Origin: Auanema rhodensis
Taxonomy: Eukaryota; Animalia; Nematoda
Reading direction: 5' to 3'
Assembly: GCA_964057225.1 (NCBI GenBank)
Contig: OZ059894.1
Coordinates: 13,640,001 to 13,704,000, forward strand
Length of the DNA stretch: 64,000 bases
Shown: one piece after another, positions 11,249-22,205 of the stretch
Layout: each line of letters opens with the position of its first letter
Position numbering within the stretch: position 1 is the stretch's first letter
Notes under the pieces: generated by a model
The model's input: only the letters and a program-made list of their open reading frames with translations
Told to the model about the DNA's origin: nothing
Databases searched by the model: none
Translations under genes and position numbers: made by a program

Positions 11249-12219
11249 ATATGGAGCTGGAGATTCTGCCTGTCAATCCGTCAGGATTTAACACGCCGGC
11301 TTTCCGGCTCCGACTAACTGTCGGCTCTCTAGTTCTATGTTCTCTGGGGGTAGACTGAAGCTGTTGGCTAAAACGTAGTCAGTTCCCGCCCGCTCGACTG
11401 ACTGGTGATAGGCTGGCTGGCCGGCAGGCAATTCCCAACAGATTTTCAGAAACAGAAACAGATTGGGGCTTGTATCAGAAAAATTCGGTAGCTACTCAAC
11501 GTAAGGACAGTCTTTCACAATACTATTCTAACAGTTTCGAGAAGCTCAACCGGAACGGCTATAGAACATAGTCCAAAATCGATACGTGCTTGGGGGCATG
11601 GACGAGAAGCGCGGCAGGATCGATGGCAAACCACGCCTTCTTTTGGCACTAGGCCAAAGCTAACTTGCAGCTTCATCGTCTGTTGTAAGCTTTATTTGGA
11701 TATATCGTAACTGCTAGTGGCATCTTCCAGAACAACACAACAATTGCAAAACTTCAGAACAAAAAACACAAAAGAAGCACGTAAAAATTTATTCATTTAT
11801 TTCAAATTGATATAATGTTAAACTATAACTGCACCATCACTGTGTATTATAATATATACATATTCTACACATTCTATGACATGACTATATCAACCGAAGC
11901 GTTATTATTATGAAAAAATTGGACCCTAGATATAAATACATTACTTACAAAAGACTAGTAATTTTACATCAAACAGAAGAACATTTGATTAGAAGAGGCA
12001 TTTGAAAGGCTTTCCCAAGCAAATTAAAGCAAGAATGCGCGATTTGAGAAGTAATATTGGGATAGTGTGTTACAGGGCAGTAACTTTTAAAAAAACAATA
12101 GGCATACACATAACTATGTCGGAAGCATGATATAGAGCGTTGTACAGCTGCATAAACAAAAAGTTTGCAGATATACCAAAATTTAGGAATTCGTTCATTA
12201 AATGAATGAAAACAAAAGT

Positions 12220-15200
12220 CTATCCTCTGAGCCAAGTCATAATTCGTTTACTTGCCGTTAACGGTCCTTCCGATCCACGGATGAAATTGCTTACACGATC
12301 CAGGGTTAGGGAGTTATATCGTTCCTCGTCTTCCCTTCTGAAAATTCGAATGTTTAATACATGAAATTTTTTTAAGAATATATACAGCTGCTCCTCAGTT
12401 GCAAACAACATTTTCATCAAATCTTCTTTTCGATCAATTGCCTCCAAATACGACTTCATTACACGATCAGTTCTTTCCTTTTCATCCAAAGATTTGTAAT
12501 AATCTAAAAGCAAAAACACATACAGAATTTTTAGAATACGCCTTACCATCGTCGTCATCTGTACTAGCAATATCCACTAATTCTTTATTTAATTTCTCAA
12601 TATCTCTTGCTACTTGTCTGCAAAGGTATAAAAAATAATGAAGATATTTTAATAATGAAATTACCTTATATTTTCAATAATATTGAAATATTCTTGTTGG
12701 CCAACCAAAGAATTTTTCTCTTCAGTTAGACGGAGGTAGGTTTCTAAAAGCATTTCTTCTTCAGAGCTTCCTTTTTCTGAAACAAATAAATTAGGAAGAG
12801 CGCAATTTCATTTATAAAACAATAAAAATTATTATTATTTATTATTATTTAATATTATTTAATTATAAAGATATTCGTTACGGTTTGAAAATTCAAGATT
12901 ATTACCTGTTTCGCGAATTTTATTTTGAATAGCATCCGCTTGTTGGGTTATATCAGCCAAACGAGTAGTGATCTCCTCCTGCTTCTTTTGGCAGCCCTCT
13001 TCATCTTCAACATCGCGCTATAATCAAGGGTTTTAGAATAGGAAATCATATATTTGAATACCTCCCACTGTAGTTTATCAATTTTTTTTGTTGGAGTAGC
13101 GTGCTCATTCAACGACAGTTGGGATCCTCTCAGTGGATCTTGCATCTAAATTATACATATTATACAGAATCTTCTAGTTAAACGTTATAGTTCTCATCAT
13201 AAACATAAACAAATAATAATGTTGTACAAATTGTTAGTATGAACATAGAAAAAACAATAACACACAACGGACTTACAAGTTGAAAAACCAAAAATGTTAA
13301 TGAACTTACTCCGTAATTCTTCGCTATTTGAGAAATACTTTCCCTTAGTTCTTGTCCTCGCATACTACCGAATCGCCTAACGCGATCAAAAGCAGTTACT
13401 CCAGCATCGACATTTTGCTACAACCACAATGGATACACACAACACAAACAAAAGGAAATTAAATAACAGAACCATCACAACATATGTATGAGAAAACTGA
13501 TAAATAAAAATATGAAAAAGCGTACCTTTATTTTATCACTGAGCATTTGTGTTGGTCTCCCCATGGCCGGAATAATTGGACTATCAAATTCATCTGAAAA
13601 CAAAACTATGAGCACAATCCCCGTGATAACTATTTCAAACTAAAGAGAAATACAGAACAAGAACAATTGAACTTAATATTACATTGCTTCCTCTGAAGAA
13701 CTGGTGAAGGGTCCCTCTTTTTGAACGACTGTATAGTTACAGAAGGTCGAACTAATTCTAAACACACATCACTACAACAATAAGCACTAATAATCCTTGA
13801 TACCAATTTTCCGAAGATCTGTGGAAGAGCCACCCAGTGAAGTTCTAGACCGAGTGGAAGCGGAACGATTTAAGTTAGATCTCACTCCAGTTGAACATAA
13901 AAGTCACAAACAATATATCAACACTTGTGCATGCATGTAAGCGATAGGTAAACAAACTTACTAGAACTAGTATTAGCTGGTGTATTCACAGCATTCTGAA
14001 TTAGTCTCCTGGCTTCCACTCTCCGTTTTTCGCTATCAGCACTCTGTAATTCAGTCAAAATTAGACTAAGATGTTATATGTGATAAACATTTGTCTCAGT
14101 TACAGCTTGCATAGGATTCTCCAACATTTGTTTAGCTTTCAAACGCAGTTGCTCTTGCTTCGATGGACTAATCGACCGCCCCTTGAATTAAAAATATATT
14201 AATAAATGAAGCAATATGGCACGTACAGATGATCGTATGCTCGATAATCGTGGTGTGGCTAAGCTAAATGTAGGAAGATCATTGTTGCTAAAAATAAAAA
14301 GCTATAGATGAAGAATATAATTTTAAACAAACTTATCGGTATGACCAGCAGTTTCCGCATCTTCATCAGCTGACTCAACATCTTCACTATCTTTAGCATG
14401 AACCTGATAAAAAAAAATGAATACATTTTTAATAAACATTTAAATACCGAATCAACAAATTCGTCTTCATTGGCTTCTCTTTTTTGCTTCATCCTTCTAA
14501 TTTCATCAATAACTTTCATTTCAGATTCGGACACTGGGAACAATTGGGATATTCGATGGTCAGAAACAGTAGTCGTGGGTGTTGAATGATCAGTGATTCC
14601 TTCGAACGCACGACGCATACTGAAAAAAATATATAATATTAAGAAGAAAATGACAACTAACCGTTCCAATAATGAGAAAATTACTTTTTTATCAGGGGTT
14701 AATATATAACTCTCGTCTGGGATATCATTTAAGCCAATTAATTGAGCAGATGCTAATACCTTCAATTTAAAAATTATTCAACAAACTTCAAGCAATCTCA
14801 TACCTTTTTAACATTATTCTTCCGTCCATGCATAGAATCCGAAAAATCTAATCCATCGTAATCAATAAGATCAGATCTGTAGGCATGAAGAATAGCACAC
14901 AGAGCAAGCCCATTTTGCCAGCATTTTCTAAAATGGATAAATAAGGTACATTATTCTGAATAGAAAACTAACGCAGTGTCATTTAACTTTACATTATAAT
15001 AACCGGATGTTACCCGTTTGGCCCATGCTTGCAAGTCTTCTCCTTCAACCTTTTCAAGTTTCCTTTCTCTAGAAGGTGCTCGTGGAGAATGTGACCGTCT
15101 ATATAGATAATTTGGTATTATAAACATGTACTGAACAAGCACTCACGTCCTTGCAGTTGGTAGTGGTTCAGGTGTTAATCCTAACTTGGTTGGAACAAAA

Positions 15201-16428
15201 ACGGGTTGACTTTTTTCATTTACCTACACAATTAACAGTTTAAACTCATTTTGGACTCGTAAAAACCTTGAAAAATGCTTCTGTTGAAATATTCAACGAC
15301 TCTTGAACAGTGGGCTCTTTGGGAACAGTGCTGGTAACTCTCCATGGAGGTCTCTCCCTGCTCACTATAAAGAAATATGTAACAGTGCAAAGAAAGACAT
15401 AATTCAAGTAAATTAGAAAGCAAAAAATATCATATATAAAATTACCTTCTGGTTCTGTTTTAATTTTTTCTTCCCTTAACTCTGGAAGGATATCAGGACT
15501 ATTATCACTCCACTGCTTGATGTTCTCAGAAACAGCTGCAATCTCCTGGCCAGCTGATTGTAATACTTAAATCTTATGTACAAAGTGTAAAAAGATAATA
15601 ACAAACTCGAATCCTTTTGTTCATGGCTACCATCCGTTACGCTAATCTCTCTGTTGTTTTTTTCAGGTTGCGATATAGAAGAAGCCGTACTGATGTCATC
15701 TCTACTAGAATTTAGAAAATATAAATTAATAAATAGTAGTTAATACGTACAATCCTTCCTTCACTAAGTTACTACTCAGAACAATTTCCAAAGAGCAATG
15801 AGTTAAATGAATACAGAGGGGACGTAATTTTAATTTAACTTGGGTGCGCTGATCGGGAGCATCCATAATAAATAGGCGAATATTCAACGATACAGCAGCA
15901 ATCGGACGACGTTTTCCTTTTTTATTAATTTCTTCAACAACTATAGTCCATTCCTGGGATAGAAATAATTATTATGAGTAAATTTTAGAAACATACCTTA
16001 TCATCAAAAGCATCATCTGTGGTAGATCTATATAAAGTTGTAAGAATATCAACATGTTCAGGAGCTTGTTCTGGCCAAACTATAACAGTTTGTTCAGGCT
16101 TACTGAAGGAAGGTTCCCATTGCCGCTCACGAGAAGTTATCTTTCGCCGCCTAAATCAGGAAAATAAAATAATGAAAAAACGGAGAGCAACCGCAAAAAC
16201 GCAAATTGCAATAAAAATGACTGATGTATGGATGAATTCGCGTTGTATTCATATCAGAAAGAAATTTTAAAAGACCAATGTTTACCTGTGCATAAAAGAA
16301 ACCAGGATAGTTTCAGGCTTATTAGCTTCATCATCCACTGCTAAGCGAAGTTCTTGAAGAGCCGCTGTGAAACGATATTTAGCTGCTTTTTTATTAGTAC
16401 GCCGCAGTCTTCTCACAATACCAGACAT
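12220..16428 (-). CDS. ehbp-1: EH domain-binding protein 1 (NT-C2, calponin-homology, C-terminal bMERB coiled coil), multi-exon
   Basis: N-terminus MSGIVRRLRRTNKKAAKYRFTAALQEL and FDDKEWTIVVEEINKKGKRRPIAAVSLNI mark the NT-C2 domain. CH domain: LQAWAKRVTSGY...GLALCAILH. C-terminal coiled coil ends KRIMTWLRG*. Confidence 0.92.
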
Positions 16429-16836
16429 TATAACTGCATTATTGTATTGATAAACATAACTAAAAAAAAATACTGAGAAGTTATACAATGAAAGCTGTTT
16501 AATGGCAAGATGTTTTAAACGAGAAAACTGAACCCAACCGCACCCATTAACCAATCAATAAAGTATACTTATTCAGATTCGTCATTGTTTTTCATTCAAA
16601 AACAAAAATTAAATATTCAAAATTAAATAATATAAAATATTACAATATAGTTAACATAATGCATGTACACTATTAGCATAATATTACAAGACTTTGTATA
16701 ATTAATGTGGGACAGTAAAGGTTTCCGTCCGAGACTTTTTTAGCCGTAGAGCATTTAAACGAAAACAATGTCTTGTAAGTTTTTAATTCATTTTAGTTTT
16801 CCTGAATTTCTTTTTTGAACTTTAAGTAAAGCGTTT
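16429..16836. promoter_or_regulatory. ~400 bp bidirectional promoter region between divergent ehbp-1 and RAP
   Basis: Start codons at 16428 (-) and 16837 (+) face away from each other, with a small GC-richer core at ~16705-16750. Confidence 0.6.
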
Positions 16837-18195
16837 ATGAAGCATCTTCTATTCTATATTCTTTTGATATGCATTTCATTCGCATATGCATCAGCAAGAA
16901 ACTATCGTTCTGCTAAGATAAATTTTGTTTATAACAAGGCTTCTCACCATATTAGTGACAAGAAGCGACTAACTAAATTAGAGGTAAGTAAAGTAATACA
17001 TAAATTTAACCAAATATATATTTTATATAATTATTACTTTTCTTGATTTCACAAAATTAAAAGAAATGATATTCAATGAAAAATTTTAGGATGAGTTGGT
17101 CAAATTTGATAATATGTATATGGACAGCAAAGATAAAACTTTAACAGGAAAAGGGAAAGACAAGGACATGGAAATAATTGATCAAAAATTATTTGCTTTA
17201 TTAGAACGATTTGACTTGCATATAACGAGTGAAACTTTTAAAGAGGTATGTAACTATTTTTAAAATATTAAGGAGCATTGAACACAATATTCAAAAACAT
17301 TAAAATTTTTGTTCTATTTTAAGAAAATGAAACACATGAATTTGTTCAAACGCGAGCTGGGGGATGTTCTATCAAAAACGTTTGATGATAAGGACATCCA
17401 TAAGATATGGAGCAAAGTAGTAGCTTCTGATATTCCAGAAGATTATAAATTAGGTACCTGATCAACTTTTTTCATGCTAATATTTTTTATCAGGATTGCA
17501 CGATCGATTAGATAAATTGTACAAAAAACTTACTCAGTTTCAAAGTGAAAGAGATTTATTAGATGAAGTAAATTGCTTTGAATGTTTTTTACTTTTACTC
17601 GTATTGTTTTTAGGAACACCACGAGAATTCTGTTCATTTGAATGAAGACGTTGATTCAAAGGTTTCTTTCACTTTTCGTATCCTGATTTTCTTTTATCTT
17701 TTAGAGAAAGATTACCGATCAGAATATGAATGATGTCCGAAATGAAATAAAGCATATACGCGACGAAGTTAATGTAGAAATAGAAAATCCTTTTGAGGAT
17801 GAGCACATTCGCAGCTTATGGAGAAAGGTGTATTTATTTTTCCTTTCTTTCATACATTATCTTTAAAGACTCAACTCGATAAGAAACTATCACGTAAAGA
17901 TCTTGAGGAACTGAAAGGTCATTTGGAATATTTTGATCATAGCTTCAAAAAAAGAAGTTATATCAAGGTATTTTTTGAATTTTTACTTCAAACGCCTATA
18001 TTGTTATAGAAGGAGCTAGATGCATCCCCTGATGGGAAAAAAATGTATGCTGAAGACGAAGACCTAAAAACTAAATATGAAGAATTAGACAGGTGTAAAG
18101 TGATTTGCTTCTATATTTCTTATCATTCTTTCTTTAGGACTTTTACGAAAGCTCTGTCTTACCTGAAAGAAAAGTACAAACATACAGAGTTATAA
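16837..18195 (+). CDS. Alpha-2-macroglobulin receptor-associated protein (RAP/LRPAP1-like ER chaperone for LDL-receptor family), multi-exon
   Basis: Signal peptide MKHLLFYILLICISFAYA, then YRSAKINFVYNKA (RAP D1-like) and NPFEDEHIRSLWRK...ELKGHLEYFD (D3-like). C-terminal ER-retention signal HTEL* at 18181-18195. Confidence 0.85.
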
Positions 18196-18622
18196 GAAGT
18201 TTTCATAATCTTATCATTACTTATTTATTATAATGTATTTTCTTAGCACGTCTATATCTTATCATCTTGTTTTTAGTTAGTGCTCAAATGATATATGTTG
18301 TGATATAAGAGAACTGTGAAGATTACATACTGGTTTCTGGGGTGAGACCCACCTACTCTTGAATAGCGTGCCTAATGATATGACGTCGTCTGTTTCTTCT
18401 TAGCATTTGTTTACTTCTACGGAATTCTCTATTGTCTATTATATGTTTTCCTAGTCTGCATAAGATTAATATATTTAATTTTTTGATAAGGATGCATTGA
18501 ATAAAAGAATATTCTTATCAATATTTTCAGTTTCCTTTAATCACTTAGGTTCAGCACTCCTATACTGTTCAGTTCACTTCTGTATAACGTTTTTCTTGAA
18601 TTTTGTAGGTGCTGTCAACAAG

Positions 18623-18913
18623 ATGTTCGAGAATATCAGATCTTTCATCAGCAGAAAGCGCCCAGCTGAGGATGTGCTCGTTGTTTTAGACCTTTCTCAA
18701 AAGGAAAATCAATTTGCTCCTCCTCGTAGGATTCCTGACTATAATTTGAAGTTTTTAACTTTGATACTTGTAGAGAAGAAGGAGAGACCGGTTCAAAAAG
18801 TTTGCCTCAAATGTTTAGCTGGCGAAGGCGGGCACATTACTCATATTCTAAGTGAAGTTCCCAAGGTAATTTCTTTTAAACAAAGTTTTAGTTAAGTGTT
18901 GCAATTTCAGTAA
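18623..18913 (+). CDS. 65-aa microprotein with C-x2-C-x6-H-x2-H motif, C10orf143-like (exons 18623-18725, 18774-18865, stop-only exon 18911-18913)
   Basis: Acceptor TTTTGTAG at 18608 and GT-AG introns give MFENIRSFISRKRPAEDVLVVLDLSQKENQFAPPQKKERPVQKVCLKCLAGEGGHITHILSEVPK*. AATAAA at ~19162. Confidence 0.75.
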
Positions 18914-19261
18914 ACCATTATTTGTTTTGTGTATATTCTGTGAAAACTGTATATTTCATGTTCTGTGTTATTATTCAAATCTCGAAGTATTACCGTGAGG
19001 TTTTATTATTTTCTTATTAGTTCTCCCACGAACTTTTGGTTTACTCTTAATTTCCCTTTCTTCCTACATACAATGTTTCATTTTGTTGGTTCCTCAACAA
19101 ATCTGTTGTGGTATTTTTGTAGTTATCGTCCGTCAAATCGTGATTGTTGTGTTTACGAAACAATAAAAAAATTTCGTTTTCTATAGTATTACCCGTTTTA
19201 GACATCATTTATTTCTTTTTCATTAGAAAGTAATTGCATGTATAATTTGAGCGTATTTTGG

Positions 19262-21678
19262 TTAGAAACATTGACTTTCGATAAAATGCTTAAAGGAATT
19301 TTTGTTTTCTTCTCTCATTTCGTTGTAGTATTTATGAATTTTCAACTCTTCCAATTGGCACTTGGTCAGAACAAATTTTGTTGCCATTATCTAAAAACGT
19401 ATTGGACATCATCAGTAAAATATCTTTCCTCTAAGCTTCTTGCATATTACTTACTTGTATTTGAAACAAATTATATCGATAGGCGAGAAGAAGAATAGTT
19501 TCTTCAGTTAAATCAGAAATTTCATATGAAGTTAGAAATTTTTCTGCAGCATTTTTGACTGTTTCAACTTGATATTTTTCTGCTAAATACAGCATAGCTT
19601 CCACATTATTTTCTTAAAAAAAAAGAAATGAAATCATTAACTGACTAGTTCAAACCGTTTGGAATAAAATCGAAATTGTATATAATGGACAAGAAATCAT
19701 AGAATTCAGTTGTATTGCAATCATCTAGTGATAATACTTTTTCTGAAAAATAACAAAAAGATTATTACTTTCAAAATAATAGAAGTATACTATCTTGTTC
19801 TGATGTCTGAAAAAGTTTTATGTATTTATTTTTTAAAATCTTAACAAACCGTGGATTGTTGAATGATATTTTTGAAAACACATGAATGAATGCACAATAT
19901 CTGTAATCGCAAACATTTATATTAAATTTGTTTAAATACTAAGCTTGACTATGACTGAACAAAATCTCTCCAGTCTGAAGATAAATAATTAAGTCAGAAT
20001 TTTCTAAATTAGGATTTCTAAAATCACAGAGAGGTGAGCATCTGGAAACATCACATATTTCTGTATGAATATATATTAATATATTACTGGAATCCCATAA
20101 CTTGATTGATTCTTAAACCCAATTCAAGCTGAACGCTACCAATTTTGAAAAGAGTATCAAGAATGGGCAGACTATATGTACTCAAAACACAATAATCAGA
20201 ATTTCCTTTGCTATGAAAATTCATATTATATGTCTGTAATGCTCTTATTTACAAAGCTGCCAAAACTATCATAAAGATGTGTACATTATGAATTACTGAA
20301 GATTTAGGTCCTTCAGCTGATTTCACCATTATTTCACAATCAGCGTTTATTGACCATGATTTCGGTGCGTCAATGCCGGGTATGGCTTGCAAACGTACTA
20401 CTCTATTTTCATTAGGGTTAATTAGTATTTTCCTATAAATAATAAAGAAAGAACTTGATATAGTATTGTCCTTACCATCTTAATGGCCCTGTGGTGAAAT
20501 GGTGGCTAGTGTCTGGCTTGTTTGCTTCCTCAGACACATTTCTAATCATGTAATTGTACTTATATGGCATCATATCAGCACTCCTTGAAGATATCAAACT
20601 AACTACCCCACACATCTTATAGATGTTTAAGACAAAGTTACATTTATCTTACTTCAATCCAAAAACTTGAAATTTCGAGAAAGAAATTTCAATTTCCATT
20701 TTCATGCATTCATTTTTTCCTGTCCTGAATATTCCGCCGGGCATAGTAAACAAATCTATCTTCATGAAATCACTTTGATTCTCATGTTCATGCGACGATT
20801 CTGCTGTGCCCTATATTGAATGTTAAAGTCTCGAGAGTAATAAATTGATTAAACTTCTTTAACTAGATGAAGATCTCCCAAAGACTTTGTTGCGATTTTG
20901 GCTTTGTAATCTGTTTCAATTTTACTTAAATTATCAATTAATTCTGTATTTGATGGATATACTAATAGACATATTTGAAAATAATTATCGTTATCTGGTT
21001 GTGATCTGGCTGCTAATTTTCTGAATAAGAAATAAATTATAGTGTGTTTAACAAAAAATACGAACAATTGGAGATTTTTATGCTCAATGTATTTCGACAT
21101 AGAAAAGGATGAGCTTATTTTTTGAAAACAATGCGAAATACTGAAGCCTGTATCTCTGAAAACGATTAATATTATGGTTGAAGAATTGTATAATAGTAAT
21201 AGTAACCTTAATCCTATCAATTTTGTTATATTAAGATCGGCTTCGACAATGATTCGATCATCAATAAAATATCCAGCTTTTAATTTATCGATAGATATTG
21301 GAAGCCAACAATGATTCCAAAATATATTATGTGGAAATAGTCGAGCACCAGCTCTGTTAAAGAATAAGCCATCTTTTTTTATAATCATGTCAGCAACATC
21401 ACTTTGTTGAGACTTTATTTTGAAAATACAGTCCGCAGTGATATTCCATAAATGGGGTAACTCATGAGTTGGTTTACCAGATATAGAAAATAGAAAATGA
21501 TCTTCTCTATTCATATTTTCTCCACGAATAGATAATTGCCTAGAAGTACTGTATACTTTATAAACATGTTTGTGCATTACCAACTAATAGAATTTTTCAT
21601 AACAATGTCTGAAAACTTCACAATGTTGTGGCTTATACTATCAAATTGGGTGAATGTGTAAGAAAATGACAAATGCAT
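19262..21678 (-). CDS. Divergent multi-MATH plus BTB domain protein (bath/math-like Cul3 adaptor), multi-exon
   Basis: MATH-like segments (WNITADCIFKI...GYFIDDRIIVEADLNI; WSINADCEIMV) are followed by a BTB domain (SDLIIYL...LFSHSQILCIHSCVFK...FYDFLSIIY...ENNVEAMLYLAEKYQV). Includes a 16-nt microexon at 19791-19806. Confidence 0.8.
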
Positions 21679-22205
21679 AATGAGCCTGAATAAATAAAAT
21701 TAAAGCAAACTATCGCAACTTTGTCCTAAATTATTTATTGGAAACTATACATGACTATCAAATGTATTTCTTATCTGTACTAAAAAAATCATTAGTAGCA
21801 AGTAGAAATACAATTTTTTAAAAGATATAATTTCAATGTATGAAATTGAGTTACTGAAGCTGAACTAAAGATCAATTGGAATGAGTAACTCGGCAAATAC
21901 TAAACATGACATTATCGCAAAATGAAATGGACACCAGGAAAGTCTGATAAATTTATCTATGTAGAATCATTCATAAAAATTTATCAATATTATAAAATTT
22001 ACTATATTTTATTGATTTAACAGTTCATTAGTATACAAAAAGCTTTATTGTAGATTTGATTTTTCAGATGAAAATAACACAGTGACAAGCTTTTTACTTT
22101 TTCTTAAAATATACTGTTTCAACAATGATATAATTTGTATCTTATAACTAAAAACAATAACAATGTAATAACGAATAACAAACATCAACACAATCAACAA
22201 CATTA

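What the first reader, a model, noticed from the sequence alone, without database searches (positions are those of the whole stretch)
16837..19190. Candidate operon: LDL-receptor chaperone RAP followed by a C10orf143-like putative zinc-binding microprotein
Seen: AATAAA at 18500, a U-rich spacer, then a TTTTGTAG acceptor at 18608, giving the ~100 nt spacing typical of SL2 operons. The downstream 65-aa product has RKRPAED and CLKCLAGEGGHITHI. Recalled: human uncharacterised C10orf143 has RRAED and CPRCIAGESGHFSH. Inference: a deeply conserved, functionally unknown microprotein (basic NLS-like patch plus CCHH-type metal site) that annotation easily misses. Its operon context offers a first functional handle.
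Basis: partly seen in the sequence, partly recalled or inferred. Interest (0 to 1): 0.7.

Follow-up and report, generated by a model that had tools for sequence, protein, structure and literature searches.

The report
RAP gene plus C10orf143-like microprotein, nematode operon
In this Auanema-like roundworm, the gene for the receptor chaperone RAP is followed about 430 bases later by a real gene for a 65-residue protein that is the worm version of the uncharacterised human protein C10orf143 (C. elegans C15C8.7); the pairing is kept across nematodes and looks like an operon, so a genetically tractable animal is available for studying a human protein of unknown function.

Summary

- **RAP gene.** 16837-18195 (+) is a 9-exon, about 305-aa RAP/LRPAP1 ortholog. 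It ends in HTEL and is collinear with C. elegans C15C8.4.
- **Microprotein gene.** 18623-18913 (+) encodes a 65-aa protein. Against Auanema sp. JU1783, exon 2 has 15 synonymous and 0 non-synonymous codon changes.
- **Family.** Searches link it to nematode orthologs, including C. elegans C15C8.7 and C. briggsae CBG08576. They also link it to nemertean, brachiopod, oyster, echinoderm and hemichordate proteins, and to vertebrate C10orf143 homologs. The nematode-versus-vertebrate profile comparison gives 98.6% probability, E 1.2e-15. All 43 members carry C-x2-C-x2-G-E-x-G-H-x2-H close to the C-terminus. Forty have a basic RKR/KRR patch near the N-terminus.
- **Linkage.** RAP followed by the microprotein on the same strand is found in six other nematode genera. 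A fused gene model in Ostertagia ostertagi implies it there too. It is absent in the two non-nematodes checked.
- **Operon.** A conserved AATAAA lies about 100 nt before an acceptor-like TTTTGTAG. Published 5' tags put SL1 and SL2 on the C. briggsae ortholog.
- **Function.** Zinc binding and nuclear localisation are inferences only.

This is a new member of a known but uncharacterised family.

The parts
16837..16983 (+). RAP/LRPAP1 ortholog, exon 1 (49 aa; hydrophobic signal-peptide-like N-terminus)
   Evidence: weak Pfam Alpha-2-MRAP_N hit, E 0.0068, below the cut-off; matches exon 1 of the RAP genes in Auanema JU1783 (E 9e-16), C. elegans (5e-11), C. briggsae and M. belari.
17090..17245 (+). 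RAP exon 2 (52 aa)
   Evidence: collinear hits in L001 (E 2e-20), Steinernema (4e-12), M. belari, C. elegans and C. briggsae.
17324..17453 (+). RAP exon 3 (donor GTACCT at 17454)
   Evidence: frame and splice sites read from the sequence; 59% identical to L001 6654-6785.
17494..17567 (+). RAP exon 4
   Evidence: collinear hit at L001 6849-6920.
17614..17661 (+). RAP exon 5
   Evidence: 87.5% identical to L001 6961-7008.
17705..17827 (+). RAP exon 6
   Evidence: 80% identical to L001; weaker collinear hits in C. elegans, C. briggsae, M. belari, Steinernema and Ancylostoma.
17869..17967 (+). RAP exon 7
   Evidence: collinear hits in all RAP loci tested except Steinernema.
18010..18092 (+). RAP exon 8
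   Evidence: 89% identical to L001 7364-7447.
18138..18195 (+). RAP exon 9, ending KHTEL and stop TAA (18193-18195); H-x-EL is an ER-retrieval-type C-terminus
   Evidence: 94% identical to L001. All eight nematode RAP loci examined (six species) end in H-x-EL.
18257..18376 (+). Strongly conserved non-coding block in the RAP 3'UTR/intergenic region (contains UGUGAUAUA); role unknown: 3'UTR regulatory element or internal promoter element
   Evidence: 88% identity over 121 nt to Auanema JU1783; no Rfam match and no stable fold (z +1.7).
18477..18519 (+). Conserved block holding the only AATAAA (18500-18505) of the gap: probable RAP poly(A) signal
   Evidence: 95% identity over 43 nt to JU1783; the AATAAA lies 120-123 nt before the microprotein ATG in both species.
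18506..18600 (+). Probable intercistronic spacer (44% T); contains a second acceptor-like TTTTCAG at 18524-18530
18601..18608 (+). TTTTGTAG: candidate trans-splice acceptor, 14 nt before the ATG
   Evidence: JU1783 has ATTTTAG 11 nt before its ATG. M. belari, Caenorhabditis and Ancylostoma have an acceptor directly abutting the ATG; a C. briggsae SL1 tag starts exactly at the ATG.
18623..18725 (+). Microprotein exon 1 (MFENIRSFISRKRPAEDVLVVLDLSQKENQFAPP plus the first base of Q)
   Evidence: 85% identical to P0001; 17 synonymous against 5 non-synonymous codon changes.
18726..18773 (+). Intron 1 (48 nt, GTAGGA...TTGTAG)
   Evidence: the annotated JU1783 protein joins PP-Q-KKERP exactly as this splice predicts. 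The intron sequence is not conserved, while both exons are.
18774..18865 (+). Microprotein exon 2 (QKKERPVQKVCLKCLAGEGGHITHILSEVPK), carrying the C-x2-C-x2-G-E-x-G-H-x2-H motif
   Evidence: 15 synonymous and 0 non-synonymous changes against JU1783; the family motif is invariant in 43 proteins.
18866..18910 (+). Probable intron 2 (45 nt), placing the stop codon in the last exon
   Evidence: GT(A/G)A...TTCAG|TAA is conserved in JU1783, while the read-through tails differ (VISFKQSFS against VS). Not confirmed by transcripts.
18911..19167 (+). Stop TAA (18911-18913) and 3'UTR up to AATAAA at 19162-19167; conserved block 18928-18956 with two UGUAUAUU motifs

Best explanation
The region holds two same-strand genes of a rhabditid nematode close to Auanema sp. 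JU1783.

**Gene 1 (16837-18195)** is the ortholog of C. elegans C15C8.4, the homolog of human LRPAP1/RAP. RAP is an ER-resident chaperone of LDL-receptor-family proteins, and this gene ends in the ER-retrieval-type signal HTEL.

**Gene 2 (18623-18913)** encodes a 65-aa protein, or 74 aa if the last intron is not removed. It is the ortholog of C. elegans C15C8.7 and C. briggsae CBG08576, and a member of the bilaterian family that includes vertebrate C10orf143.

**Most likely transcription.**
- The pair is transcribed from the RAP promoter as one precursor.
- RAP mRNA is cleaved after the conserved AATAAA at 18500.
- The microprotein mRNA is trans-spliced about 85-100 nt further on, at 18608.
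- The leader is probably SL2, with some SL1 from an internal promoter (a 'hybrid' operon), as the C. briggsae tags suggest.

**Most likely nature of the protein.** It is mostly disordered. An N-terminal RKR patch is inferred to be a nuclear-localisation signal. A C-terminal 14-residue C-x2-C-x6-H-x2-H knuckle is inferred to bind one zinc ion and to be the functional core.

**Shown here:** gene structures, coding selection, family membership, and conservation of the linkage.
**Inferred:** co-transcription and SL2 use in this species, metal binding, and nuclear localisation.
For: **Gene models and selection**
- Gene models.
- Exon 2 has 15 synonymous and 0 non-synonymous codon changes; exon 1 has 17 and 5.

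**RAP identity**
- Collinear exon hits to C15C8.4 and other RAP loci.
- Pfam Alpha-2-MRAP_C on record for the orthologs.
- H-x-EL ends.
- PMC3789837.

**Microprotein family**
- Searches give a graded chain from nematodes to proteins named C10orf143 homologs. E values are 2.5e-4 to 2e-3 for shark and lamprey against 5.8 billion sequences.
- hhalign: 98.6% probability, E 1.2e-15.
- Language-model lead to a C10orf143 cluster, score 0.90.
- All 43 members have the motif 1-18 residues from the C-terminus, and 40 have a basic triplet within the first 26 residues.

**Linkage (RAP stop to microprotein ATG, same strand)**
- This window: 427 nt.
- Auanema JU1783: 446 nt.
- C. elegans: 494 nt.
- C. briggsae and a sister species: about 490 nt.
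- Steinernema: 597 nt.
- M. belari: 4.4 kb.
- Ancylostoma: 3.3 kb.
- An Ostertagia gene model fuses the two genes.
- No linkage in Tubulanus or Lingula.

**Operon signals**
- Conserved AATAAA block and acceptor.
- TEC-RED tags in C. briggsae: CBG08577 -162 nt- CBG08576, with SL1=1 and SL2=1. The SL1 tag starts at the ATG after CTTCCAG, which matches locus L006.

**Disorder plus a small knuckle**
- AlphaFold2 with a 43-sequence alignment: mean pLDDT 62; the only secondary-structure element is a helical turn at residues 46-49.
Against: - No transcript evidence for this species.
- In M. belari and Ancylostoma the genes are 3-4 kb apart, so tight spacing is not universal.
- The C. briggsae ortholog also carries SL1, which points to an independent promoter as well. 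The C. briggsae operon is only 'predicted' there, and its RAP tag is of a lower-confidence category, 2c.
- I found no record of whether C. elegans annotates C15C8.4 and C15C8.7 as an operon.
- In C. elegans a C15C8.4 reporter is neuronal, whereas C15C8.7 is listed among germline-expressed genes. That fits poorly with strict co-expression.
- The homology to C10orf143 rests on 21 aligned columns.
- Metal binding has no direct support: no Pfam or PDB relative, and the structural model is of low confidence.
Confidence: 0.62

Rival explanations
1. The two genes are merely neighbours. The microprotein gene has its own promoter in the 427-nt gap, for example in the conserved block 18257-18376. Its transcript is SL1 trans-spliced or not trans-spliced, and the conserved linkage reflects shared regulatory DNA or low rearrangement rather than co-transcription.
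For: - SL1 tags are present on the C. briggsae ortholog.
- The gaps are 3.3-4.4 kb in Ancylostoma and Mesorhabditis.
- A strongly conserved non-coding block lies upstream of the microprotein gene.
- Caenorhabditis has a GC-rich box followed by TATAAAAG about 175-180 nt before the ATG, which could be a promoter rather than a poly(A) signal.
- Different expression is reported for the two C. elegans genes.
Against: - An SL2 tag is also present on CBG08576.
- The annotated 3'UTR of CBG08577 ends 162 nt before the downstream ATG, just after the TATAAA, as expected if that hexamer is a poly(A) signal.
- Same-strand adjacency of two unrelated genes is kept across clades IV and V and is absent outside nematodes.
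- The distance from AATAAA to the acceptor is about 100 nt and is conserved in both Auanema-like genomes.
Confidence: 0.28
2. It is an SL1-type or very short-spacer operon. The strong consensus acceptor TTTTCAG at 18524-18530, only 19-25 nt after the AATAAA, is the true trans-splice site. RAP 3' end formation and trans-splicing of the microprotein mRNA would then occur at practically the same place, giving a 92-nt 5'UTR.
For: - TTTTCAG at 18524 matches the nematode acceptor consensus better than TTTTGTAG does.
- There is no ATG between 18531 and 18622.
- SL1-type operons without a spacer are described in C. elegans and C. briggsae (text of PMC9258526).
Against: - In JU1783 the corresponding site is degraded (CACTTT-AG), whereas an acceptor close to the ATG is present in every species examined.
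- The C. briggsae tag starts at the ATG itself.
Confidence: 0.05
3. The C-terminal motif is not a zinc site. It would instead be a short linear peptide motif, such as a docking site, a redox-active CxxC, or a site for a modifying enzyme, in an otherwise disordered protein.
For: - The protein is predicted to be disordered with no confident fold (the Atlas model has pLDDT 0.28).
- The invariant G-E-x-G between the Cys pair and the His pair is not needed for simple metal ligation.
- No known zinc-finger family matches.
Against: - Two Cys and two His are invariant in all 43 proteins, from nematodes to mammals, with fixed spacing. This is the classical signature of a tetrahedral metal site.
- The C-x2-C...G-H arrangement resembles the retroviral-type zinc knuckle C-x2-C-x4-H-x4-C (general knowledge, not tested here).
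Confidence: 0.3
4. The resemblance to C10orf143 is convergent: two unrelated small proteins share a similar short Cys/His motif by chance.
For: Only 21 columns align between the nematode and vertebrate profiles, and the rest of the proteins is too divergent to align.
Against: - E 1.2e-15 and 98.6% probability for that stretch.
- Seven invariant positions.
- The same placement at the extreme C-terminus, the same N-terminal basic patch and a similar size.
- A continuous series of intermediates in nemertean, brachiopod, mollusc, echinoderm, hemichordate, lamprey and shark.
- Strongyloides and Parastrongyloides carry the mammalian-like GHF(K/R)H variant.
Confidence: 0.03

Closest known systems
C. 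elegans C15C8.7 / C. briggsae CBG08576 (uncharacterised 74-aa proteins)
   Same: - These are orthologs. They share the N-terminal MF(E/D)...RKR and the C-terminal QKVCLKCLAGE(G/S)GHITH(I/V)L.
- The position is the same, directly downstream of the RAP gene on the same strand.
- CBG08576 has SL1 and SL2 tags in predicted operon CBROPX0269.
   Different: - The window protein is shorter (65 aa against 74 aa).
- Its middle part is diverged (46-50% identity).
- It probably has an extra intron just before the stop codon, and its acceptor lies 14 nt before the ATG rather than abutting it.
Vertebrate C10orf143 (human 108 aa; mouse 9430038I01Rik; zebrafish-type name si:ch211-221j21.3)
   Same: - Same family by profile search and by profile-profile comparison.
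- The motif C-x-R-C-L-A-G-E-S-G-H-(I/F)-x-H sits at the C-terminus, and there is a basic KRR/RRR patch near the N-terminus.
- Function is unknown. In human it was recognised as coding only through PhyloCSF, and it is broadly expressed (PMC6886504).
   Different: - The vertebrate proteins are 92-119 aa and have an additional conserved KR-x-C-x-G(L) element and a Trp-containing middle region that nematodes lack.
- They are not linked to LRPAP1 (LRPAP1 is on human chromosome 4 and C10orf143 on chromosome 10; general knowledge).
- The human sequence itself was not retrieved here; the closest mammalian sequences seen were marsupial and monotreme.
RAP / LRPAP1 (alpha-2-macroglobulin receptor-associated protein); C. 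elegans C15C8.4
   Same: - About 305 aa, with a signal-peptide-like start and an H-x-EL ER-retrieval end (human RAP ends HNEL; general knowledge).
- The orthologs carry Pfam Alpha-2-MRAP_C, and in Steinernema Alpha-2-MRAP_N as well.
   Different: The window's own exons are too short and too diverged to reach Pfam thresholds one by one. The best is exon 1, E 0.0068 against Alpha-2-MRAP_N. Membership therefore rests on orthology.
SL2-type (and hybrid SL1/SL2) operons of rhabditid nematodes
   Same: - Two unrelated same-strand genes.
- A poly(A) signal about 100 nt before an acceptor just upstream of the downstream ATG.
- Linkage kept across nematodes.
- An SL2 tag on the ortholog.
- PMC7668243's abstract reports SL2-type trans-splicing as a widely conserved nematode trait rather than one confined to Rhabditina; Auanema belongs to Rhabditina.
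   Different: - Not demonstrated in this species.
- The ortholog shows mixed SL1/SL2.
- Spacing is loose in two genera.
CCHC zinc knuckle (C-x2-C-x4-H-x4-C) and classical C2H2 finger
   Same: A compact Cys/His motif with a C-x2-C turn and a Gly-His pair.
   Different: The spacing is C-x2-C-x6-H-x2-H and the last ligand is His. There is no match to any Pfam zinc-finger model at a meaningful E-value. It works perhaps like a knuckle, but it is not a member of either family.

Membership tests
C10orf143 / C15C8.7 family (no Pfam model) | C-terminal motif C-x2-C-x2-G-E-x-G-H-x2-H within about 20 residues of the C-terminus | tested here: met
   Window exon 2 has CLKCLAGEGGHITH, 7 residues from the predicted end. 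The motif is invariant in 43 family members.
C10orf143 / C15C8.7 family (no Pfam model) | Statistically significant sequence relationship to proteins named C10orf143 | tested here: met
   Profile search: E 2.5e-4 to 2e-3 for shark and lamprey C10orf143 homologs in a 5.8-billion-sequence database. hhalign of nematode against vertebrate profiles: 98.6% probability, E 1.2e-15 over 21 columns.
C10orf143 / C15C8.7 family (no Pfam model) | Small protein (about 65-190 aa) with a basic RKR/KRR patch near the N-terminus | tested here: met
   The window has SRKRP at residues 10-14. Forty of 43 members have a basic triplet within the first 26 residues.
RAP / LRPAP1 | Pfam Alpha-2-MRAP_N / Alpha-2-MRAP_C domains | tested here: inconclusive
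   Searched exon by exon, only exon 1 gives a sub-threshold Alpha-2-MRAP_N hit (E 0.0068, 16.9 bits against a cut-off of 29.7). The joined protein was not searched, by operator rule. The orthologs in M. belari, C. elegans, C. briggsae, Steinernema and Ancylostoma carry PF06401 on record, and the window exons align collinearly to them.
RAP / LRPAP1 | ER-retrieval C-terminus of the H-x-EL type and an N-terminal signal sequence | tested here: met
   The gene ends KHTEL-stop. All eight nematode RAP loci examined (six species) end HSEL, HREL, HTEL or HVEL. The N-terminus MKHLLFYILLICISFAYA is hydrophobic; no signal-peptide predictor was run.
SL2-type nematode operon | Same strand, short intercistronic distance (about 100 nt from 3' end signal to trans-splice acceptor) | tested here: met
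   AATAAA is at 18500 and the AG of the acceptor at 18607-18608. The layout is conserved in JU1783.
SL2-type nematode operon | Downstream mRNA carries SL2 | not testable with these tools
As a surrogate, the C. briggsae ortholog CBG08576 has both SL1 and SL2 tags (PMC9258526, supplementary file 7).
SL2-type nematode operon | Polycistronic precursor spanning both genes; no obligatory internal promoter | not tested
   No transcript data. The SL1 tags in C. briggsae suggest that an internal promoter exists as well.
Classical zinc fingers (C2H2; CCHC knuckle) | Canonical ligand spacing (C-x2-4-C-x12-H-x3-5-H, or C-x2-C-x4-H-x4-C) and a match to the family model | tested here: not met
   The spacing is C-x2-C-x6-H-x2-H. 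No zinc-finger Pfam model matched better than E 0.07 in any of 30 members scanned. No PDB sequence match was found.

The most novel reading that the evidence does not exclude
The C10orf143/C15C8.7 proteins define a previously undescribed minimal metal-binding module, C-x2-C-x2-G-E-x-G-H-x2-H, at the tip of a disordered and probably nuclear microprotein. The module would have been conserved since the bilaterian ancestor. In nematodes the gene has been locked into an operon with the receptor chaperone RAP since before clades IV and V split. The stronger version is that this pairing reflects a real functional coupling between the two products.
Probability: 0.35. Interest if true: 0.6.

Novelty: new member of a known kind. 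Interest (0 to 1): 0.48.

Why it matters
C10orf143 was recognised as a human protein-coding gene only through comparative genomics. It is broadly expressed, and in the literature searched here it appears only in gene lists.

This work shows that it belongs to a family with one invariant 14-residue Cys/His motif running from nematodes to mammals, and that C. elegans (C15C8.7) and C. briggsae (CBG08576) carry orthologs. The function of the human protein can therefore be approached by knockout, tagging and motif mutagenesis in a worm.

The nematode-wide pairing with the RAP gene is a clean example of an operon-like gene pair retained across distant nematode clades, and it gives a ready test case for SL1/SL2 'hybrid' regulation. 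For function, the operon context is only a weak hint, because operon partners in nematodes are usually unrelated in function.

Tried and rejected
- **Reads.** Splice sites, the poly(A) site and leader use are unverified for this species.
- **Pfam and PDB on single RAP exons** gave only one weak hit. RAP identity was established through orthologous loci instead.
- **Pfam on 30 microprotein family members** and a **PDB profile search** gave nothing. The weak zf-Tnp_2 hit (E 0.1) is probably chance. It may perhaps account for the automatic 'Transposase' names on two orthologs.
- **AlphaFold2 with a 43-sequence alignment** gave a low-confidence, essentially disordered model. I therefore ran no fold search, since the matches would be meaningless.
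- **Conserved 3'UTR block as a structured RNA.** There is no Rfam hit, and the fold is no better than shuffles. Rejected.
- **C. elegans operon or SL2 status of C15C8.7** was not found: no paper text mentions it, and three supplement searches were blank or not held.
- **Gnathostoma (clade III).** The contig is too short to test the linkage.
- **SL1 and SL2 leader 3' halves** are not present in the window.
- **Earlier findings near this place:** none.
- **Human sequences.** The human C10orf143 sequence itself was not retrieved, and no human contig was fetched.
Full report
**What is in the sequence**

The window is AT-rich (30.7% G+C), and its genes have introns of about 41-106 nt. The plus strand from 16837 to 18195 carries nine exons. 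Each one translates cleanly and is flanked by GT and AG. Together they give about 305 codons, starting with a hydrophobic signal-like peptide and ending in KHTEL-stop.

After a 427-nt gap, an ATG at 18623 opens a second gene.
- Exon 1 is 18623-18725.
- A 48-nt intron follows.
- Exon 2 is 18774-18865.
- A probable 45-nt intron follows.
- The stop TAA is at 18911-18913.

The gap holds a single AATAAA, at 18500.

**Are these real genes?**

A word-indexed search with the unspliced ORF found a 67-aa protein of Auanema sp. JU1783 (P0001) and a 73-aa protein of Mesorhabditis belari (P0002).
- P0001 joins ...FVPP-Q-KKERP... exactly as the predicted 48-nt intron requires.
- Codon by codon against the JU1783 locus, exon 2 has 15 synonymous and 0 non-synonymous differences in 30 codons. 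Exon 1 has 17 and 5 in 34 codons. That is strong purifying selection on the protein.
- The intron itself is not conserved.
- The last intron is less certain. Its GT...TTCAG|TAA boundaries are conserved while the read-through tails differ. Without transcripts, a 74-aa unspliced variant cannot be excluded.

All nine exons of the upstream gene have collinear matches at 54-94% identity in the JU1783 locus.

**Identity of the upstream gene**

Single exons are too short for Pfam. Only exon 1 gave a sub-threshold Alpha-2-MRAP_N hit (E 0.0068). Orthology fills the gap.
- The gene directly upstream of the microprotein ortholog carries Pfam Alpha-2-MRAP_C on record in M. belari, C. elegans, C. briggsae, Steinernema hermaphroditum and Ancylostoma caninum.
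- The window's exons align collinearly to those genes.
- Every one of them ends in H-x-EL, the ER-retrieval type of ending known from human RAP (HNEL; general knowledge).
- The C. elegans gene is C15C8.4, called the LRPAP1 homolog in PMC3789837.

**Identity of the microprotein**

The searches were run in this order.
1. The exhaustive HMMER search with a four-row nematode alignment returned only nematode proteins (Teladorsagia, Mesorhabditis, Caenorhabditis angaria, Heligmosomoides, Panagrellus, Gnathostoma) and two unnamed assemblies.
2. Re-searching with that wider alignment added C. elegans C15C8.7, C. briggsae CBG08576 and Steinernema. It also found the first non-nematodes: a starfish, two acorn worms and a nemertean.
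3. A third round seeded with these reached crinoids, Lingula and an oyster. It also reached proteins that NCBI names C10orf143 or C10orf143 homolog: Heptranchias E 3.5e-4, Lampetra 2e-3, Mobula, Amia, a marsupial and two monotremes. These E-values are for 5.8 billion sequences.

As a separate test, a profile of 18 nematode proteins was compared with a profile of 12 vertebrate proteins. The result is 98.6% probability and E 1.2e-15 over 21 columns. A protein-language-model search had independently ranked a 'C10orf143 homolog' cluster second, at 0.90.

In an alignment of 43 members, seven positions are invariant: C-x2-C-x2-G-E-x-G-H-x2-H. The motif always lies 1-18 residues from the C-terminus, and 40 of 43 proteins have an RKR/KRR-type triplet in the first 26 residues. 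The caveat is that only the C-terminal 21 residues align across phyla.

No Pfam family and no solved structure match. AlphaFold2 with the full alignment predicts a disordered chain with a single helical turn at the C-x2-C.

**Operon question**

The RAP-then-microprotein order on one strand is found in the following genomes. Distances are from the RAP stop to the microprotein ATG.

| Genome | Distance |
|---|---|
| This window | 427 nt |
| Auanema JU1783 | 446 nt |
| C. elegans | 494 nt |
| C. briggsae and a sister species | about 490 nt |
| Steinernema | 597 nt |
| M. belari | 4.4 kb, in two copies |
| Ancylostoma | 3.3 kb |

In Ostertagia a gene model fuses the two genes. In a nemertean and a brachiopod the microprotein gene has other neighbours. 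The pairing is therefore nematode-specific and old, covering clades IV and V.

In the window and in JU1783, the AATAAA sits in a 43-nt block of 95% identity, and an acceptor lies 11-14 nt before the ATG. In Mesorhabditis, Caenorhabditis and Ancylostoma the acceptor abuts the ATG.

The only experimental evidence I could reach is published.
- The TEC-RED 5'-tag study of C. briggsae (PMC9258526, supplementary file 7) lists predicted operon CBROPX0269 as CBG08579 -5777- CBG08577 (SL2 tag) -162- CBG08576 (SL1 and SL2 tags).
- The SL1 tag sequence and its CTTCCAG acceptor match locus L006 exactly at the ATG.
- The gene immediately upstream in that locus is the RAP ortholog.
- The same paper lists C15C8.7 among germline-expressed orthologs.

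Taken together, this makes a co-transcribed pair with mixed SL1/SL2 use the most likely arrangement.

Points against a strict operon:
- the wide spacing in two genera;
- the SL1 tags;
- the different reported expression of the two C. elegans genes;
- a strongly conserved non-coding block (18257-18376, 88% identity) that could be either a 3'UTR element or an internal promoter.

A second, better-consensus acceptor (TTTTCAG, 18524-18530) right after the AATAAA allows a minor SL1-type alternative. It is not conserved in JU1783.

**How it probably works**
- *Shown:* two conserved genes under selection, in a conserved arrangement.
- *Inferred:* RAP acts in the ER as a chaperone of LDL-receptor-family proteins. 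The microprotein is a disordered, basic protein that is probably nuclear. Its invariant two-Cys/two-His knuckle probably holds a zinc ion.
- The spacing C-x2-C-x6-H-x2-H fits neither the C2H2 finger nor the CCHC knuckle. The protein may work like a knuckle, but it is not a member of those families.
- A non-metal reading of the motif remains possible (about 30%).

**Novelty**

The family is already annotated as 'uncharacterised' (C10orf143; C15C8.7; CBG08576), and the C. briggsae operon is already listed as predicted. This locus is therefore a new member of a known kind.

What the analysis adds:
- an explicit, statistically supported link between the nematode genes and vertebrate C10orf143;
- the invariant motif;
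- the depth of the RAP linkage within nematodes.

No functional study of C10orf143 or its mouse, fish or worm orthologs turned up in the literature searched.

**Limits**
- There are no transcript data.
- The joined spliced proteins were not searched.
- The human C10orf143 sequence itself was not retrieved.
- The C. elegans operon annotation was not found.
- Clade I-III nematodes were not tested.

Noticed in passing
window 18257-18376: This non-coding block between the RAP stop and the AATAAA is 88% identical to Auanema JU1783 over 121 nt, better conserved than most of the RAP coding sequence. It contains UGUGAUAUA, which fits the FBF/PUF-type consensus UGUDHHAUA (general knowledge). TTGTGAT-type repeats also recur in the corresponding gap of three Caenorhabditis loci. 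There is no Rfam match and no stable fold.
   Followed up: partly
window 18928-18956: The microprotein 3'UTR has a 29-nt block that is nearly identical in JU1783. It holds two UGUAUAUU motifs (PUF-like) and may be a target of post-transcriptional control.
   Followed up: no
window 19000-22150: The window has about 2 kb more than JU1783 between the microprotein gene and the SDA1-like gene. A minus-strand ORF at 19431-19604 (MEAMLYLAEKYQVETVKNAAEKFL...) may belong to an extra gene that is absent at this place in JU1783.
   Followed up: no
window 11770-16445 (minus strand): The gene upstream of RAP, transcribed divergently, is the ortholog of the NT-C2/CH/bMERB (EHBP1-type) gene. The same gene sits beside RAP in JU1783 and M. 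belari but not in Caenorhabditis.
   Followed up: partly
L002 7978-8060 (M. belari): The annotated 73-aa M. belari protein is marked 'partial' and starts at an internal Met. An in-frame ATG 24 nt upstream, directly after TTTTCTAG, gives MFESVCNW..., which restores the family's MF(E/D) start.
   Followed up: partly
L002 and L003 (M. belari contig CAUEEP010000742.1): The whole EHBP1-RAP-microprotein block is present twice on one contig, about 1.4 Mb apart, with nearly identical layout. The long microprotein intron holds a roughly 200-nt inverted repeat that looks like a small transposon (L002 8590-8790).
   Followed up: no
P0012 (Ostertagia ostertagi KAK6027676.1): This 272-aa gene model named 'Alpha-2-macroglobulin RAP protein' is a fusion. 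RAP exons run straight into the complete microprotein (MFEDVQRTISRKRP...), skipping the RAP C-terminus. It is probably an annotation artefact caused by the gene pairing.
   Followed up: partly
P0013, P0019, P0006 (UniRef names): Orthologs in Haemonchus placei and Panagrolaimus are auto-named 'Transposase', and the one in Heligmosomoides 'RMI1_N domain-containing'. Nothing here supports these names; the best Pfam hit to any transposase zinc-finger model is E 0.1.
   Followed up: partly
L004 5790-5840; L006 and L005, same region: In Caenorhabditis the RAP-microprotein gap has a conserved GC-rich box (CCCCGCC) followed by TATAAAAG about 175-180 nt before the microprotein ATG. JU1783 has a C-run at the analogous place. 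The hexamer could be the RAP poly(A) signal, the TATA box of an internal promoter, or both.
   Followed up: no
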